A DNA stretch of 64,000 nucleotides, taken from positions 226,180-290,179 of IMG/VR virus record IMGVR_UViG_3300008261_000001. One strand, given 5' to 3'. The number at the start of each line of letters is the position of its first letter. The first letter of the stretch is position 1. Under the pieces are notes generated by a model, which saw only the letters and a list, made by a program, of their open reading frames with translations, ran no database searches and was not told the origin of the DNA. The position numbers and the translations under genes were made by a program. Below are positions 3,556-9,211 of this stretch, piece by piece.

Positions 3556-3840
3556 TCAGTAAGTGTGATCCCAAGATAGCCTAGCCTTACCTCGGAGCTT
3601 CTTAACAGCCCTCTCCGCTCTCATGGCTTCAGATCTGTTTGCATAGGTGCAATAGACACACATAAGCACCCACGGACGATACTTAGCTGTGTACTTAGCC
3701 CCACCAGCGATTTCTCCGTTGTGTTGCCTCAGTCGCCTCTCCACATTCGTCGTGCAACCCACATAATAAAAACCCTCTGCTGGCTTACCCTTCGCTGTGG
3801 TTCTCGGCATCTGACTTTGGATCACATAGACATACCACAT
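3556..3840 (-). CDS. GIY-YIG nuclease (Slx1/UPF0213-like)
   Basis: WYVYV...YYVGCTTNVERRLRQHNG..GGAKYT..RPW..SEAMRAE. Confidence 0.9.
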   Translation of the reverse strand: MWYVYVIQSQMPRTTAKGKPAEGFYYVGCTTNVERRLRQHNGEIAGGAKYTAKYRPWVLMCVYCTYANRSEAMRAERAVKKLRGKARLSWDHTY

Positions 3841-3892
3841 AGCATTCCTCCTATAATGGATAAGTAGATAGGACACCTATCCATTATAGAGA

Positions 3893-4498
3893 CTATCTGT
3901 GAAGCTGTCTGAGATATAGGTCGGCTATTTTTTGTGATGGACTCATGGGCTGTGTGGATCCAACCCTTCTTAGACTCGCCATGATTTGTCTGCCGTCTGC
4001 GTCTACCTCACGCTCAATCTTGAGAGCAGGTCTTCTGACTAAGTAGTTGGGCCACTTCTCAAACCACTTGGCGTAGAACTCGTCTTCCGCCACCTCACGA
4101 GTTGTCTTATCGGGGTTTGGGATATTGGGGTCTGCCACATGGACTATGTAGTTGCCCTTCTCTCCCGTCACATCGAAGATGAGGCTTGCATGGCTCCACT
4201 CTCGCCCCTCAGGGTTCCAAGCGATGAGGACTGGGTGTCCAGCGTCTGTCCACTCTTTGACTTGAGTGAGCGTAGCGGGAGTTGTGAGCGTTGCTCTACA
4301 ACCGAAGTACTGAGCACACGCTAGGACTTCTTCCCATCGAGCCCCTTGCATGGGTTTTGCACCGATGACCGAGTTTACTTCGTCTTCGGTGCATTTCACT
4401 CCTACTGCATTTAGTGCCATACAGGTGGAGGTGGCGACACAAGAGAACTGAGTTCTTTGGCGGATAGGACTTACATCTGCTTTGGCTAATCTTCTCAT
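3893..4498 (-). CDS. C39-like cysteine peptidase
   Basis: Q..QFSC, HAS, VADPN catalytic Cys/His/Asp arrangement. Confidence 0.8.
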   Translation of the reverse strand: MRRLAKADVSPIRQRTQFSCVATSTCMALNAVGVKCTEDEVNSVIGAKPMQGARWEEVLACAQYFGCRATLTTPATLTQVKEWTDAGHPVLIAWNPEGREWSHASLIFDVTGEKGNYIVHVADPNIPNPDKTTREVAEDEFYAKWFEKWPNYLVRRPALKIEREVDADGRQIMASLRRVGSTQPMSPSQKIADLYLRQLHR

Positions 4499-4562
4499 GC
4501 TAGTAGTCTCCTACTTGGACTTATGCTTATCCAATAGGTGATGTATAGAGACTCTAGTAGAT

Positions 4563-4991
4563 TTATCCAATCACTACGCAGTATCCAGAGCTTGGGTACT
4601 GCTTCTTTAAGGATTTCCAGACCCTATCCGCTTGCTCGGAGGTGGAGCCTCTAACGCTACATTTTTCTGGTATAATAACGAACGGCTTTCCAATCTCTTT
4701 CAGCCATCCTTTTATGAGTTGATTGTAGATTTCTGATCCAATGCCTTTTCCGTGATATTCTTTATTTAGGCTCACCACATTTACTTCGAGTATCCGTATG
4801 TCTTCTCCGTCCATGACTTTTGGATACTCGTAGCTAATGTCGATGAGGTCATCGGAGCAGGCGTAGGTGTGGACTACCTCCAACATGGATATGGAGTTTC
4901 CATAAGCCCTAGCAAGACCTATAGACTCACCATCGTCTTTCACCTCTACAAACACATTAGTTGGTGTTGTGGATATGGAGTAGGTGATCAT
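4563..4991 (-). CDS. GNAT-like acetyltransferase
   Basis: LNKEYHGKGIGSEIY acetyl-CoA motif A; ADRVWKSL. Confidence 0.65.
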   Translation of the reverse strand: MITYSISTTPTNVFVEVKDDGESIGLARAYGNSISMLEVVHTYACSDDLIDISYEYPKVMDGEDIRILEVNVVSLNKEYHGKGIGSEIYNQLIKGWLKEIGKPFVIIPEKCSVRGSTSEQADRVWKSLKKQYPSSGYCVVIG

Positions 4992-5660
4992 TTACTCTTC
5001 TTCTGTAGTGGTAGCGGTCTTCTTACCCCCTTTTGCAGAAGTCGAAGCACTAGATGAAGGGCTAGACTTGGTTGAGTACTTTAGCTCCATCTCCACAGCG
5101 TAGAGCTTCTTCTCTAAGTTCGACAGATCGGTGTCTACCTTGCTTTGAAGAGCGTCTGTTTTGCTCTGCACAGCGTCTAGCTTTTTGGATAAGCCATCTT
5201 GCTGTGTGGAGAGGGTGTCGAGCTGTTTTGACGCATTATTGGATAGTGTCTCGATCTCGCCTTTAAGAGTTCCGTAGGTCGCTTGAGCGATATCCATTTT
5301 CTCTAGATACTTTTTGCCCAAGAAGCCGACCACAAGGACAATGGCAAGCCACACATTGTCTCCAGCTAGGCGAACTACTTGTACAAGGTCTAGATCTCCG
5401 CCTTGTGTGTTCTGTTGAACCATTGGCTGTTGAACCATTGGCTGTTGTTGAGGGACACTTACAGGCTGATAAGTCTGTGGGGTGACAGCCACCACAGGTA
5501 CTTCTACGGGCTCTGTATCGCCAACAGAAGGTGCTTCCTCCTTAGAGGCATGGAGGAACTTGCACTCGGACAAGTCCGCCACCTTTGTCTTTCCGTCTAT
5601 GACCCAAAGGTTGCCCTCACGAGTGATGACGGGGTTTTTGGTTTTGATTACGCAAGTCAT
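4992..5660 (-). CDS. Membrane-anchored coiled-coil protein (paralogue of 9208..9873), possible lysis accessory
   Basis: Cys-bounded N-terminal domain, P/Q linker, one TM, coiled coil; overlaps the endolysin stop. Confidence 0.6.
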   Translation of the reverse strand: MTCVIKTKNPVITREGNLWVIDGKTKVADLSECKFLHASKEEAPSVGDTEPVEVPVVAVTPQTYQPVSVPQQQPMVQQPMVQQNTQGGDLDLVQVVRLAGDNVWLAIVLVVGFLGKKYLEKMDIAQATYGTLKGEIETLSNNASKQLDTLSTQQDGLSKKLDAVQSKTDALQSKVDTDLSNLEKKLYAVEMELKYSTKSSPSSSASTSAKGGKKTATTTEEE

Positions 5661-6100
5661 TTAGCCGCCCCCGATCTCTCGTCCCACCTTGCACCCTGCT
5701 TGTGTCCTGTAGCCTCACTTCTGACATCGTAGTGACAGAAATCGTCATAGACACCCAAGCCCCCATTGTACACCTTGCCCTCTTTGATGAGCTTGGTGAT
5801 GAGGGTGTGTACTTGTGTGGAGGTCATACCCTTGATTTTGATATCAGCGGCGGCGGCTTGTAGGTGGAGGGACTTGTCTTTCCCACCCACTGCCGCGTTG
5901 CGGGCGGCAGAACGATAACCACTTATGATGGTTATAGGTGCGTTAGCCGCTTCTCGGATAACCTGTAGGTTTTCCAATAGAAGGGTCGCGTTAGCCATAA
6001 ACTCAGGCGGGATTACATCGTAGAACTCAAGCTCTGAGTACTTGAAGTTCTTAGTGCAGGAAATATTTGTCTTTTGATCTTGAGAGAGGGGTGACGACAT
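5657..6100 (-). CDS. Peptidase M15A (Zn D-Ala-D-Ala peptidase family), putative endolysin
   Basis: ISGYRS..N..VGG..SLH...AADI, GLGVY..FCHYD. Confidence 0.9.
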   Translation of the reverse strand: MSSPLSQDQKTNISCTKNFKYSELEFYDVIPPEFMANATLLLENLQVIREAANAPITIISGYRSAARNAAVGGKDKSLHLQAAAADIKIKGMTSTQVHTLITKLIKEGKVYNGGLGVYDDFCHYDVRSEATGHKQGARWDERSGAAK

Positions 6101-6147
6101 GACTTACACTCCTATTGGGTTGTGTAAGTCCCCCCTATCATAAAAGG

Positions 6148-6549
6148 TTAATGATAAATATGTCCGAAGTCTGGGCAGTCACCACGGATGTCGAAGAACT
6201 CAGCTTTGGGGTTTTCGTTCTTTTCGAAGTCGATGAGGTCGAACTGATAAGACGAGACATTGTCTGACCCCTCGTTTTTGTAAATAGTAACGAGGACAAC
6301 CTCAGTGTTGTCCTCTTTGATTAAGATAGCCACCATCACGAAGCCTCCCTTCTCTAACAGAAGGTGTCTAGTGTAGTCCCCCCAACAGCAGATATCGGCA
6401 TGGACTTCCTCTGGAGCTTCGAGCCGTACTAGACCTTGAGAACCACCGAGTTTGAACATATACGGAGGCATATCGGATAGTTTTGGTGATTCTGGGCTGA
6501 CGAGTATCCCTCGAACTGCTTTTAAGATTTCCGCATTTGATGGGAGCAT
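6148..6549 (-). CDS. Hypothetical protein
   Basis: 133-aa ORF in the same orientation as its neighbours. Confidence 0.55.
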   Translation of the reverse strand: MLPSNAEILKAVRGILVSPESPKLSDMPPYMFKLGGSQGLVRLEAPEEVHADICCWGDYTRHLLLEKGGFVMVAILIKEDNTEVVLVTIYKNEGSDNVSSYQFDLIDFEKNENPKAEFFDIRGDCPDFGHIYH

Positions 6550-6622
6550 ATAACCAACTTTCTATTAAGAGCAACGACAGCAATATTACCCATTATAGCT
6601 ATCTAACGAGGATAAACCCGAG

Positions 6623-6655
6623 AAAAAGAAAAAGGGCTGATTTCTCAGCCCTTTT
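6623..6655 (-). terminator. Intrinsic (potentially bidirectional) terminator after tRNA-Lys
   Basis: aaaagggctga-tttc-tcagccctttt stem with T-runs on both strands. Confidence 0.8.
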
Positions 6656-6656
6656 A

Positions 6657-6729
6657 TGGGTCCTCTGGGGCTCGAACCCAGAACTAACGGATTAAAAGTC
6701 CGCTACTCTACCGATTGAGTTAAGAACCC
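6657..6729 (-). tRNA. tRNA-Lys(UUU), CCA not encoded
   Basis: GGGTTCT..AGGACCC acceptor stem, GCGGA-CTTTTAA-TCCGT anticodon arm, GTTCGAG T-loop. Confidence 0.95.
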
Positions 6730-6738
6730 TTGTTGTAG

Positions 6739-6768
6739 CCCTTATACCACATAAATCAAACCTAGCAA
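6739..6768 (-). promoter_or_regulatory. Sigma70-like promoter for tRNA-Lys
   Basis: TTGCTA...TGGTATAAGGG; the same TGGTATAAGGG lies upstream of tRNA-Thr (~7176-7186). Confidence 0.55.
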
Positions 6769-6777
6769 AAAAAATAG

Positions 6778-7091
6778 TCCAACCCCTCGCCAACTCCCGA
6801 AGGTTGACTGAGGGGTTGTGGGGTGGAGCGACTTCCCTGTCTATCTGAGTCCACATAACGCCCCTGTGTCGCCATACTGCTTCCCTTATCGTCTCCCCCT
6901 ATAGGTTGGGTTCAGAACCTCCCAACCTATAGGGCTTATCTAGCTTGCTTAGACACATTAAACACCTAGAGTCAGGATCTAGGTGCTTGGGGCTAGACAG
7001 ATCGATAAAGATATACATTTAGGTGTAAGCCCCTAAATGACGCATACCATCACCGCTTACTGCGTTTAAGGTGGCTTCTAGACCCCTTAAA
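6778..7091 (-). ncRNA. Unidentified highly structured RNA between the tRNAs
   Basis: At least six stems (one perfect 14 bp), cUUCGg tetraloop, crossing long-range pairings, G-U pairs favouring the minus strand, no ORF. Confidence 0.65.
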
Positions 7092-7092
7092 G

Positions 7093-7165
7093 TGCCACCT
7101 ACAGGATTTGAACCTGTGACATCCTGTTTACAAGACAGGTGCTCTACCAACTGAGCTAAGGGGGC
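7093..7165 (-). tRNA. tRNA-Thr(UGU), CCA not encoded, C4-U69 mismatch
   Basis: AGCTCAGTTGGTAGAGC D-arm, CCTGT-CTTGTAA-ACAGG anticodon arm, GTTCAAA T-loop. Confidence 0.93.
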
Positions 7166-7203
7166 GTGTGCTTACCCTTATACCAAACCCCTCCCCCTCA
7201 AAC

Positions 7204-7596
7204 TCAAATAAATTTATCTAGTATCGGCTTTCTGTCCTTTGGGTGGAGCTTGCAGTTAGAAAGATACGAGAACGGAACCCATTTCCACTCGTCATTTTCG
7301 TTATCCAATATGGGAGTAAACTTAGTCGATACTTCTGCCAAATAGAGCGTGTACCCCGAGCCATACAACTCGTCGTAAATCTGAAAAGGAACCTTCTCCA
7401 CTCCAATCAAGTTCTCTGAAGGATCTCCCCCTACCTCTTCGTAGAGTTCACGCATAGCTGTTTCGTAGTGCGTCTCCCCGCCCTCGGTTTTACCTCCAGG
7501 GAAGTTCCAATATCCGCTCCATCTGTCCTCTGTTTTGGATACCCTTCTTAGAATCAGCGTGTCCCCACCGCTTATGAACATAACACCTGCACCCAT
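7204..7596 (-). CDS. NUDIX hydrolase
   Basis: PGGKTEGGETHYETAMRELYEEVG Nudix box. Confidence 0.92.
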   Translation of the reverse strand: MGAGVMFISGGDTLILRRVSKTEDRWSGYWNFPGGKTEGGETHYETAMRELYEEVGGDPSENLIGVEKVPFQIYDELYGSGYTLYLAEVSTKFTPILDNENDEWKWVPFSYLSNCKLHPKDRKPILDKFI

Positions 7597-7684
7597 AGCG
7601 ACTCCTTTTATGTTTAGGTTGTAGGTTTTATTACCATAATAAACCTTTTATGTTTTTTCAGCCTAAACAATCGGAGAGAAAAAG

Positions 7685-8053
7685 ATGAAGTACTTATATC
7701 ACTACGAAGCTGAGGTGTTATCCGTTTACGATGGGGACACCTGTACCCTACAGATTTGCTGTGGGTTCGATATGTACACAAGGGTGACTTTTAGACTCAC
7801 AGGCATAGACACCGCTGAGATGAAGTCCAAAGACCCCTTAAAGAAAGAGGCAGCTCTACAAGCTAGAGACCACCTCAGAAGTCGTATCCTCGGCAAGAAG
7901 GTCATCGTCAACACTAGAGAGCGAGAGAAATACGGAAGGTGGCTTGGATACATTTGGGCAGACGAGGGACAAGATGAACTAGGGGAGTCCATCAACGACG
8001 AGATGATTCGTCTCGGTCATGCCAAGCCCTACGATGGTGGTAAGAAAGAATAA
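7685..8053 (+). CDS. Thermonuclease (SNase-like)
   Basis: VYDGDT, RLTGIDTAE, EKYGRWLG, GHAKPYDGG. Confidence 0.92.
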   Translation: MKYLYHYEAEVLSVYDGDTCTLQICCGFDMYTRVTFRLTGIDTAEMKSKDPLKKEAALQARDHLRSRILGKKVIVNTREREKYGRWLGYIWADEGQDELGESINDEMIRLGHAKPYDGGKKE

Positions 8054-8059
8054 ACTGCT

Positions 8060-8716
8060 CTATAGAGCTTTAGGGGAGGGTACTAAGGGTATTAGCTTAT
8101 CAAAGCCCTTAAAAGCAGACTTGTGGGTTACATCATTACTTTTAATCAGTGTGTCGCTATAGTTATCAGAGTCGTTTAAGACGCTAACATCTGCAATACC
8201 ACAGATGTAAAAATCTAGTCCCTCCTTCATTACGATCACTTGAGGGTACTCGTGCTTTTTAGCCGTGATAGAAGGTTTCTTCAGCAAAGGATAGTCGTAC
8301 TGATCCCCCTCTTTAGACCCAGTCTTAACGCCTATGGATAAACCACCACGCTCTAGATCTGGACTGTCGAAGTCAGCAGACTCACCCACAGAGAAATCTA
8401 CCACCTCTCTGTGGTCTAACCCAAGATACACACAGACTGCTATCTCACCTAGCTTTCCTGTAGTATGCCTCTTCCTTATAGACCCACCATCGTTTTTGTA
8501 CCCACCCTCACCCCTCTTTTTCTCTATGATGGGTGAGACCATCTCGGATACATACTGTTCAATATCTTCTGTTAGGGTGATTTTTGGTTTATCCGACACA
8601 TATTTCCAAATAGTATGTGGGTTGTTTTGTGACCACCTTGATTTGTTTAGCCTCTCCGCCCAATCGCCATTCTTGTCCTCATCCCCCAAGCTCTCTAGAA
8701 TCTTATCTAAGCTCAC
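8060..8716 (-). CDS. Putative PD-(D/E)xK-fold nuclease
   Basis: GKLGEIAV...SPDL...IGVKT; GTG start with AGGAGG. Confidence 0.45.
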   Translation of the reverse strand: MSLDKILESLGDEDKNGDWAERLNKSRWSQNNPHTIWKYVSDKPKITLTEDIEQYVSEMVSPIIEKKRGEGGYKNDGGSIRKRHTTGKLGEIAVCVYLGLDHREVVDFSVGESADFDSPDLERGGLSIGVKTGSKEGDQYDYPLLKKPSITAKKHEYPQVIVMKEGLDFYICGIADVSVLNDSDNYSDTLIKSNDVTHKSAFKGFDKLIPLVPSPKAL

Positions 8717-8827
8717 GCTGACCTCCTTTGGTTTCTCGTAGTTATTATGGGATTTAGGTGCTTAATAATTTGTTTATATACCCACAAAACATTGTCCAAA
8801 TAACCCCAACAAGAGAGTATATAGAGT

Positions 8828-9211
8828 ATGCCCCTAGTCCATCAGCACATCGTTGTCCGCTCCCATGTCATGAAGCCTCCCATGAGCGAGGAGGAGACGA
8901 AGAACTGGCTCAAAGAGCTTATTTCTAAAATCGACATGAAGATCCTAAACGGTCCTCATGCGACTTATTTAGATAAAGAGGGTAATAGGGGTGTGACGGG
9001 CGTCTGCATTATCGAGACTTCTCACATTGCAATCCATGTGTGGGATGAGGAGTCTCCAGGTCTTATTCAGCTTGATGTGTACTCGTGTAAGGACTTCGAC
9101 AAAGAGGTGGTGTTCAAGCACTTTGAGTGCTTTGAGCCTGTCTCGACCGAGTGGTTCATGCTCGACCGCACCGACAAGTTATCCATTACGGACGACATAC
9201 AGAAGAAATGA
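8828..9211 (+). CDS. speD: S-adenosylmethionine decarboxylase proenzyme
   Basis: GVTGVCIIETSHIAIHVW..QLDVYSC (pyruvoyl-forming Ser, catalytic Cys). Confidence 0.88.
   Translation: MPLVHQHIVVRSHVMKPPMSEEETKNWLKELISKIDMKILNGPHATYLDKEGNRGVTGVCIIETSHIAIHVWDEESPGLIQLDVYSCKDFDKEVVFKHFECFEPVSTEWFMLDRTDKLSITDDIQKK

What the first reader, a model, noticed from the sequence alone, without database searches (positions are those of the whole stretch)
6778..7091. ~310-nt pseudoknotted non-coding RNA co-transcribed with tRNA-Thr
Seen: ORF-free DNA directly 3' of tRNA-Thr with stems at 7065-7091, 7040-7065, 7016-7039, 6963-6985, 6897-6934 (perfect 14 bp) and 6780-6818 (cUUCGg loop, followed by a U-run). 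Two long-range helices cross in A-B-A'-B' order: ctttatcg 7010-7003 with cgataagg 6891-6884, and ctgtcta 7000-6994 with tagacag 6843-6837. G-U pairs and the UUCG loop point to the minus strand. Known: large phage ncRNAs such as GOLLD and ROOL sit next to tRNAs but are longer. Inference: an undescribed structured RNA or ribozyme released by tRNA processing.
Basis: partly seen in the sequence, partly recalled or inferred. Interest (0 to 1): 0.75.

Follow-up and report, generated by a model that had tools for sequence, protein, structure and literature searches.

The report
New structured RNA in phage tRNA operon
A freshwater jumbo phage encodes, between its tRNA-Thr and tRNA-Lys genes, a roughly 315-base folded non-coding RNA that matches no known RNA family, turns up in environmental RNA libraries and keeps its helices in a diverged relative, but its function is unknown and it is confined to a narrow phage clade.

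Summary
The sequence features are real. On the minus strand, 7091 to about 6767, directly after tRNA-Thr(UGU), lies a non-coding stretch that ends in a cUUCGg hairpin plus U8. It matches no Rfam family and no GenBank phage.

Four metatranscriptomes from three studies hold contigs lying wholly inside it (6823-7080, 0-1 mismatch), with none on 2 kb of flanking genes.

A diverged homologue sits in the same tRNA-Thr/tRNA-Lys slot of a related phage. Three closer variants were also recovered.

Comparison supports these parts:
- a 5' hairpin;
- a hairpin whose loop pairs with an upstream strand;
- a second crossing helix pair around an invariant 17-nt loop;
- a terminator.

There is no evidence for a ribozyme.

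Best reading: a new, clade-restricted, stable structured RNA made as the 3' part of the tRNA-Thr transcript and probably acting in trans. Its target and function are unknown.

The parts
7175..7185 (-). Extended -10-like promoter box TGGTATAAGGG, 10 nt upstream of tRNA-Thr. Inferred start of the tRNA-Thr plus RNA transcript.
   Evidence: The 11-mer occurs only three times in the 290-kb genome, each 10-11 nt upstream of a tRNA (Glu, Thr, Lys). TGGTATAAT and TGGTATAGT boxes precede two other tRNA groups. Promoter function is inferred.
7092..7165 (-). tRNA-Thr(UGU), no encoded CCA.
   Evidence: ARAGORN; Rfam tRNA model, 72.8 bits.
7065..7091 (-). P1: 5' hairpin that starts right after the tRNA 3' end (7091-7085 pairs with 7071-7065).
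   Evidence: I8. Kept in the diverged homologue with one G-C to A-U compensatory pair and a different distal part.
7055..7060 (-). Strand a (GUAAGC), complementary to the loop of the next hairpin (7030-7025).
   Evidence: Read. The homologue has CUAGUAGC pairing with GCUACUAG at the same places, including a matched loss of one A-U pair. Either a loop pseudoknot or an alternative pairing.
7016..7039 (-). Hairpin b/b' (7039-7032 pairs with 7023-7016). Its 8-nt loop holds strand a' (7030-7025).
   Evidence: Five of 8 pairs changed on both sides in the homologue, none broken.
7003..7010 (-). P3 5' strand.
   Evidence: The 93 % variants change U.G to C-G and C-G to U.G against an invariant partner. 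The homologue keeps 7 of the 8 pairs (4 + 3 around one unpaired U). The L057 and G001 minimum-energy folds predict it independently.
6938..6998 (-). P4 arm: helix 6998-6992 with 6944-6938, enclosing the variable hairpin 6985-6978/6970-6963.
   Evidence: The homologue has an 11-bp perfect helix at the same place, with one compensatory pair. The A-to-G change in the 93 % variants adds a C-G pair.
6897..6934 (-). P5: 14-bp hairpin with a 10-nt loop. The loop carries the invariant UCUGA at 6916-6912.
   Evidence: I1. Two to eight pairs changed on both sides in the homologue, depending on alignment. The loop sequence is conserved.
6884..6894 (-). Invariant block AGACGAUAAGG (junction plus P3 3' strand).
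   Evidence: Identical in all six sequences.
6825..6864 (-). S1 helix (6864-6859 pairs with 6830-6825), enclosing a 21-nt loop.
   Evidence: Two pairs changed on both sides in the homologue, none broken.
6839..6856 (-). Invariant single-stranded block AUGUKGACUCAGAUAGAC. UCAGA at 6848-6844 is the exact complement of the P5 loop UCUGA.
   Evidence: 17 of its 18 bases are identical across about 45 % diverged sequences. The possible loop-loop contact is inferred; both sides are invariant, so covariation cannot test it.
6820..6838 (-). S2: GGG at 6837-6835 pairs with CCC at 6823-6821, crossing S1. Either a pseudoknot or an alternative pairing.
   Evidence: The G-C pair becomes A-U in the 93 % variants and in the homologue, where the helix is GAGGG with CCCUC.
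6767..6818 (-). Intrinsic-terminator-like hairpin (6818-6780, cUUCGg loop) followed by U8 (6774-6767). Inferred 3' end of the RNA.
   Evidence: I13. The hairpin plus U-rich tail is kept in all three sequence types with many compensatory changes.
6739..6749 (-). Second TGGTATAAGGG box, the tRNA-Lys gene's own promoter-like site. It shows that the RNA is not a leader of tRNA-Lys.
   Evidence: (D1).
6657..6729 (-). tRNA-Lys(UUU), followed by its own terminator at 6655-6630.

Best explanation
The stretch 7091 to about 6767 (minus strand) is a gene for a previously undescribed structured non-coding RNA of about 315-325 nt, carried by a clade of uncultivated freshwater jumbo phages.

Shown:
- It is conserved in position and in helices between diverged phages.
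- It has no conserved reading frame.
- It is present in environmental RNA libraries in which the neighbouring phage genes were not seen.

Inferred:
- Transcription starts at the extended -10 box upstream of tRNA-Thr, so tRNA and RNA are made as one precursor.
- Host 3' tRNA processing (RNase Z or RNase E type; the tRNA has no encoded CCA) frees the RNA.
- The RNA is capped by hairpin P1 at its 5' end and by the terminator hairpin at its 3' end, which would explain why it accumulates.

Proposed fold:
- P1;
- a hairpin whose loop can pair with an upstream strand;
- a three-way junction (P3, P4, P5);
- a second crossing pair of helices (S1, S2) that displays an invariant 17-nt loop;
- the terminator.

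Most likely mode of action (inference, roughly 30 % of my belief): it acts in trans in the infected cell as a folded binding platform or decoy for a host or phage protein or RNA. Recognition would go through the invariant unpaired blocks: UCUGA in the P5 loop and GACUCAGAUAGAC in the S1 loop.
For: Expression:
- Four metatranscriptomes from three studies each hold a contig lying wholly inside the element (6823-7051, 6884-7080, 6867-7055, 6836-6998; 0-1 mismatch).
- Depth is zero over 5600-6600 and 7200-8100 in all four.

Conservation:
- A related 110-kb phage record has a roughly 400-nt spacer in the same tRNA-Thr/tRNA-Lys slot, upstream of the same two genes. It shares only short blocks of sequence.
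- A covariance model of the three-way junction built from the window type alone finds that spacer full length (23.6 bits, E = 4e-4).

Helices:
- 97.9 % of cells are paired, against 29-49 % when partners are slid. Nine pairs change on both sides (0 of 500 shuffles reach this).
- Hairpin b/b' has 5 compensatory pairs and S1 has 2, with none broken.
- S2 has a G-C to A-U change already among 93 % identical variants.
- The consensus nested fold costs only +1.0 to +1.4 kcal/mol over the minimum-energy fold in the window types.

Transcription unit:
- The promoter box is found only before tRNAs.
- There is a terminator-like hairpin plus U8.
- tRNA-Lys has its own box and its own terminator.

Strand:
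- G.U pairs in P3, P4 and S1, and the U.G/C-G exchanges in P3, are pairs only on the minus strand.

Novelty:
- No Rfam match and no blastn match in 50,697 GenBank phages.

Non-coding:
-.
Against: - Only three effective lineages exist (window type, 93 % variants, one diverged type), so no formal covariation statistic is possible. The alignment used was fitted to the model.
- The RNA evidence comes from assembled contigs without strand or end information. The tool warns that a hole in coverage proves nothing.
- No RNA run was listed for the diverged type.
- A close relative (94 % identical neighbouring peptidase) has tRNA-Thr and tRNA-Lys but no element, so the element is dispensable.
- Co-transcription, processing and every functional statement are inferred.
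- No target was found. The phage genome holds no good complement of the invariant loop, and the host is unknown.
Confidence: 0.6

Rival explanations
1. It is a passive 3' trailer or spacer of the tRNA-Thr transcript. On this view it is a run of hairpins plus a terminator that insulates neighbouring tRNA units, is stable only because it is well folded, and has no activity of its own.
For: It is absent from a close relative that keeps both tRNAs. Its distribution is very narrow. The P4 interior and the P1 tip are freely variable.
Against: Blocks of 11 and 17 nt stay invariant while the rest is about 45 % diverged. Compensatory changes keep long-range and crossing helices, not just local hairpins. 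A plain terminator does this job in the relative with only about 50 nt.
Confidence: 0.17
2. It is an RNA that assembles with itself or docks tRNAs, a small analogue of the GOLLD and ROOL cages found beside phage tRNA islands. It would use the complementary invariant loops UCUGA and UCAGA between molecules.
For: It has the same genomic habitat as GOLLD and ROOL, which lie near tRNA islands in phages and assemble through kissing loops (10.1101/2024.12.08.627333). Two invariant, exactly complementary pentamers lie in loops.
Against: There is no homology to either family. The RNA is half their size or less. The two pentamers could equally pair within one molecule. Nothing tests assembly.
Confidence: 0.1
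3. It is a self-cleaving or otherwise catalytic RNA.
For: It has a complex fold with probable pseudoknots and invariant unpaired nucleotides.
Against: No ribozyme family matches even at E<=10. RNA contigs run unbroken over 6823-7080. No conserved catalytic-core motif was recognised.
Confidence: 0.05
4. It is a cis-acting attenuator that sets read-through from tRNA-Thr into tRNA-Lys. The competing pairings (a/a' against b/b', S1 against S2) would act as a switch.
For: Two pairs of mutually crossing helices are both conserved. A terminator lies at the 3' end.
Against: tRNA-Lys has its own promoter-like box and its own terminator. The crossing helices lie 30-250 nt from the terminator and do not overlap it. 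The RNA accumulates as a product.
Confidence: 0.05
5. It encodes a small protein (39-56 aa frames) or is a decayed tRNA gene.
For: Mechanical ORFs exist. There is a 21-nt, 76 % resemblance between the P5 3' half and the 5' end of tRNA-Lys (D2).
Against: The 39-aa frame is broken by a 1-nt deletion in a 99.4 % variant, and no frame is shared with the homologue. Local alignment to the neighbouring tRNAs is no better than shuffles (53-241 of 300 reach the score). ARAGORN and the tRNA model find nothing in the spacer.
Confidence: 0.02

Closest known systems
ROOL and GOLLD RNAs (large ornate non-coding RNAs of phages and prophages)
   Same: They are encoded by phages, often next to tRNA islands, are highly structured with pseudoknots and kissing loops, and have no known function (10.1101/2024.12.08.627333).
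   Different: There is no match to either covariance model. This RNA is about 315 nt rather than about 580 to over 800 nt, has roughly nine helices rather than dozens, and is confined to one narrow phage clade. Multimer formation is untested.
tRNA-precursor spacer RNAs such as E. coli 3'ETS-leuZ (recalled from the literature, not checked here)
   Same: They are functional RNAs cut out of a tRNA operon transcript. They lie between the last processed tRNA and the operon's intrinsic terminator, which forms their 3' end.
   Different: 3'ETS-leuZ is about 50 nt and acts as a simple base-pairing sponge. This RNA is six times longer, has a conserved multi-domain fold, and no pairing target was found.
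Phage T4 stable RNAs 'species 1 and 2' (rnaC, rnaD) in the T4 tRNA cluster (recalled from the literature, not checked here)
   Same: They are stable small RNAs of unknown function, encoded inside a phage tRNA gene cluster and matured from tRNA precursor transcripts.
   Different: The T4 RNAs are about 120-140 nt. No sequence similarity to T4-like phages was seen in the blastn searches.
Catalogue of candidate structured RNAs from IMG/VR (PMC10690425)
   Same: It draws on the same data source, and its candidates are also defined by covariation in phage intergenic regions.
   Different: Its candidates are 29-151 nt and needed at least three unique regions. This element is longer and has only two sequence types in IMG/VR. 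I could not check whether a fragment of it is listed, because no supplement is held.

Membership tests
GOLLD / ROOL | Significant match to the family's covariance model. | tested here: not met
   No hit at gathering score in the window, nor at E<=10 in 6500-7400 or in the homologue.
GOLLD / ROOL | Length of about 580 to over 800 nt with a many-helix ornate fold. | tested here: not met
   About 315-325 nt from the tRNA 3' end to the U-run, with about nine helices.
GOLLD / ROOL | Encoded by phages or prophages beside tRNA genes. | tested here: met
   It lies between tRNA-Thr and tRNA-Lys of a 290-kb virus record and of a related record.
GOLLD / ROOL | RNA-only multimeric cage. | not testable with these tools
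   This needs native gels or cryo-EM. The only lead is a pair of complementary invariant loops.
Self-cleaving ribozymes (hammerhead, twister, pistol, hatchet, HDV-like and others) | Match to a ribozyme covariance model or conserved catalytic core. | tested here: not met
   None listed at E<=10.
Self-cleaving ribozymes (hammerhead, twister, pistol, hatchet, HDV-like and others) | Site-specific self-cleavage. | tested here: inconclusive
   RNA contigs are continuous over 6823-7080, but contigs do not show ends.
tRNA, tRNA-like element, tmRNA | Cloverleaf or tRNA-like domain recognised by ARAGORN or the Rfam models. | tested here: not met
   ARAGORN and RF00005 find only the two flanking tRNAs. 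Similarity to them is at shuffle level.
Intrinsic (Rho-independent) terminator (3' module only) | G+C-rich hairpin followed by a U-run. | tested here: met
   Hairpin 6818-6780 with U8 at 6774-6767. The simple scan missed it because the U-run starts 5 nt after the stem. It is conserved with compensatory changes.
tRNA-operon spacer RNA (3'ETS type) | Lies between a tRNA 3' end and the unit's terminator, without a promoter of its own. | tested here: inconclusive
   The position is met. No sigma-70-type site was found inside 6780-7091, and the promoter box lies upstream of the tRNA. Transcript ends were not mapped.
tRNA-operon spacer RNA (3'ETS type) | Acts by base-pairing with a target RNA. | tested here: inconclusive
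   No convincing complement of the invariant loop exists in the phage genome. The host genome is unknown.
Structured non-coding RNA gene (general) | Helices kept by compensatory change, evidence of a transcript, and no conserved ORF. | tested here: met
   covariation; RNA contigs; ORFs.

The most novel reading that the evidence does not exclude
A new class of phage tRNA-island RNA that works as an RNA machine in its own right. Either it self-assembles through the complementary invariant loops (UCUGA and UCAGA) into an RNA-only complex, as ROOL and GOLLD do, or it docks phage or host tRNAs to shield them from tRNA-targeting defence nucleases or to deliver them.
Probability: 0.1. Interest if true: 0.8.

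Novelty: new variant of a known kind. Interest (0 to 1): 0.5.

Why it matters
Phage tRNA islands repeatedly harbour large folded RNAs whose function is still unknown (GOLLD, ROOL, and the T4 stable RNAs).

This adds a much smaller, independently evolved example:
- its transcription unit is clear (tRNA promoter to terminator);
- there is direct evidence of accumulation in lake metatranscriptomes;
- it has a compact set of invariant loops to mutate.

At about 315 nt it is small enough for SHAPE, crystallography or cryo-EM and for pull-downs. That could make the general question of what tRNA-island RNAs do for phages more tractable.

Against this, it is confined to a narrow clade of uncultivated phages with no known host, and a close relative does without it. 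Its reach is therefore limited.

Tried and rejected
Searches for homologues that gave nothing new:
- Exact-pattern scans with 18-20-mers of the element found only an identical contig.
- Two- and three-block pattern scans of viral, metagenome and genome collections found only the window type, the one diverged type and chance coding hits.
- Synteny through the NUDIX gene reached relatives that carry other tRNAs or none.
- Synteny through the M15 peptidase gave one useful variant (L036). Otherwise it gave contigs without the element or broken at tRNA-Lys.
- A DNA-polymerase-based search for relatives found only near-identical records, because the patterns came from the N-terminus.
- The nearest GenBank record (485-kb uncultured phage, 47 % DNA polymerase identity) lacks the element.

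Ideas tested and not supported:
- tRNA-derived origin.
- An antisense target inside the phage genome.
- Small-ORF coding.
- RNase P-like and T-loop resemblances were noticed by eye. They are not conserved in the homologue, or are too degenerate to count.

Alignment limits:
- MAFFT alignments of the two types are out of register for P1, a/a', P4, P5 and S2. Those helices were therefore checked with a model-based alignment or by hand.

Steps not run:
- I did not run complex prediction. An RNA-only prediction against shuffles would only restate the 5-nt complementarity.

Full report
**Context.** The window is the last 64 kb of a 290-kb IMG/VR virus record (93 % complete, 47 % G+C). Fourteen freshwater, lake or drinking-water metagenome runs hold 66-100 % of the sampled words of the region, so the phage is widespread. 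Its family A DNA polymerase is only 47 % identical to the nearest GenBank record, a 485-kb uncultured phage. On the minus strand the order is:
- a NUDIX gene (7596-7204);
- tRNA-Thr(UGU) (7165-7092);
- a 362-nt spacer;
- tRNA-Lys(UUU) (6729-6657);
- a terminator (6655-6630);
- a 133-aa ORF and an M15 peptidase.

**Observation.** The stretch folds better than shuffles (z = -4.96 and -3.28). The opposite strand also folds well. Long-range 7-8-bp complementarities occur at chance frequency. The local hairpins were therefore a sound observation. The two crossing long-range helices could not be judged from one sequence.

**Transcription unit.** The 11-mer TGGTATAAGGG, an extended -10-like box, occurs three times in the whole genome, each 10-11 nt upstream of a tRNA (Glu, Thr, Lys). 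Close variants precede two other tRNA groups. The spacer ends in a 39-nt hairpin with a cUUCGg loop, then U8 (6818-6767). tRNA-Lys then has its own box and its own terminator. The simplest reading is one transcript holding tRNA-Thr plus the spacer RNA, ended by the terminator. This is inference.

**Expression.** I laid four metatranscriptome runs from three studies on 5600-8100.
- Each run holds one contig of 163-229 nt lying wholly inside the spacer (6823-7051, 6884-7080, 6867-7055, 6836-6998; 0-1 mismatch).
- None has any depth on the 1 kb of coding sequence on either side.
- The tRNA matches are 90-95 % partial hits from other organisms.
- DNA contamination would cover the flanks as well, so this looks like an RNA far more abundant than the neighbouring mRNAs.

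Caveats: these are assembled contigs without strand or ends, and the tool warns that holes prove nothing.

**Homologues.**
- Blastn against 50,697 GenBank phages finds nothing outside the tRNAs.
- A related 110-kb record (NUDIX 64 %, DNA polymerase 88 %, M15 peptidase 88 % identical) gave two short collinear matches. These lie in a roughly 400-nt spacer between its own tRNA-Thr(UGU) and tRNA-Lys(UUU), upstream of the same two genes.
- The two spacers share only short blocks: AGACGAUAAGG, AUGUKGACUCAGAUAGAC, UCUGAACCC and CUUU(A)UCGAU.
- Contigs found through neighbouring proteins gave three closer variants at 99.4, 93.7 and 93.1 % identity.
- Pattern scans of viral, metagenome and genome collections found no further type.
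- A close relative (M15 peptidase 94 %) has tRNA-Thr followed only by a short terminator, and its tRNA-Lys sits in a tight four-tRNA cluster. A covariance model finds no element there or in the 485-kb phage.

The element is therefore clade-restricted and dispensable.

**Structure.** Independent minimum-energy folds of the 93.7 % variant and of the diverged type both give P1, hairpin b/b', a three-way junction (P3 closing P4 and P5) and the terminator.

A covariance model of the junction, built from window-type sequences only, aligns the diverged spacer full length (23.6 bits, E = 4e-4). On that alignment:
- 97.9 % of cells are paired, against 29-49 % when partners are slid;
- nine pairs change on both sides (note that the alignment is fitted to the model).

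RNAalifold on a plain MAFFT alignment shows 5 compensatory pairs in b/b' and 2 in S1, with none broken.

Reading the sequences by hand shows the following:
- P4 is 7 bp in the window, 8 bp in the 93 % variants and 11 bp in the diverged type.
- S2 (GGG with CCC, crossing S1) changes G-C to A-U in the 93 % variants and in the diverged type.
- The loop of b/b' is complementary to an upstream strand in both types (6 and 8 bp), with a matched loss of one A-U pair.

The consensus nested fold costs +1.0, +1.4 and +7.6 kcal/mol over the respective minimum-energy folds. The G.U pairs and the U.G/C-G exchanges are pairs only on the minus strand.

The invariant P5 loop pentamer UCUGA is the exact complement of UCAGA in the invariant 17-nt loop. 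I estimate post hoc a chance of about 3 % for this. Since both sides never vary, it cannot be tested by covariation.

**What it is not.**
- No Rfam family matches at gathering score or at E<=10 for either type.
- There is no tRNA-like or tmRNA element.
- Similarity to the flanking tRNAs is at shuffle level.
- The 39-aa frame is broken in a 99.4 % variant, and no frame is shared with the diverged type.
- No complement of the invariant loop exists in the phage genome.

**Mechanism.** I consider it shown that this is a conserved, folded, non-coding RNA present in RNA libraries.

I infer three further steps:
- It is made with tRNA-Thr from the tRNA promoter.
- It is freed by 3' tRNA processing.
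- It is stabilised by its terminal hairpins.

My preferred function is a trans-acting folded platform or decoy that presents the invariant loops to a protein or RNA partner. I give this about 30 %. The rivals are listed separately: a passive spacer, a self-assembling or tRNA-docking RNA, a ribozyme, an attenuator, and a coding region or tRNA relic.

**Comparison and novelty.** The closest things functionally are the tRNA-island RNAs ROOL and GOLLD, tRNA-operon spacer RNAs such as 3'ETS-leuZ, and the T4 stable RNAs. The last two are recalled from the literature and were not checked here. The element fails the membership test for GOLLD and ROOL, having no model match and the wrong size. I rate it as a new variant of a known kind, that is, a new RNA family in a known habitat. 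Interest is moderate: it is real, expressed and undescribed, but narrow in distribution, dispensable and of unknown function.

Noticed in passing
window 7175-7185 and 6739-6749; genome position 183125 (outside the window): The 11-mer TGGTATAAGGG occurs only three times in the 290-kb genome, each 10-11 nt upstream of a tRNA gene (Thr, Lys, Glu). TGGTATAAT and TGGTATAGT precede tRNA-Val and tRNA-Arg. The phage tRNAs seem to have their own dedicated extended -10 promoters.
   Followed up: partly
L033:1671-1996 and L034:1022-1094 (record IMGVR_UViG_3300035670_000160): A close relative has the same tRNA-Thr and tRNA-Lys at different places. tRNA-Thr is followed by a short terminator, and tRNA-Lys sits in a four-tRNA cluster. 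tRNA islands are reshuffled between near relatives.
   Followed up: partly
L035, L056, L058, L060 (Logan contigs): Several independent assemblies of relatives break about 160 nt upstream of the 133-aa ORF, at tRNA-Lys. This is probably because tRNA sequence is shared with other organisms. It explains why few public contigs span the element.
   Followed up: no
window 6730-7091: CTAG occurs 6 times in 362 nt (about 17 per kb), against 3.3 per kb in the genome. The sites are mostly inside the stems.
   Followed up: partly
window 3556-9211: The neighbourhood is a mix of small accessory genes: a GIY-YIG nuclease-like ORF, a C39-like peptidase, an M15 peptidase (DUF882-like), NUDIX, a staphylococcal-nuclease-like ORF and an AdoMet-decarboxylase-like ORF. 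NUDIX is next to the element only in the window type.
   Followed up: no
L061:221-238 and L063:8418-8435: Two unrelated viral contigs carry ATGTAGACTCAGATAGAC in an intergenic spot just upstream of a terminator-like hairpin. I judged this a chance match to the invariant block, with no other similarity.
   Followed up: partly
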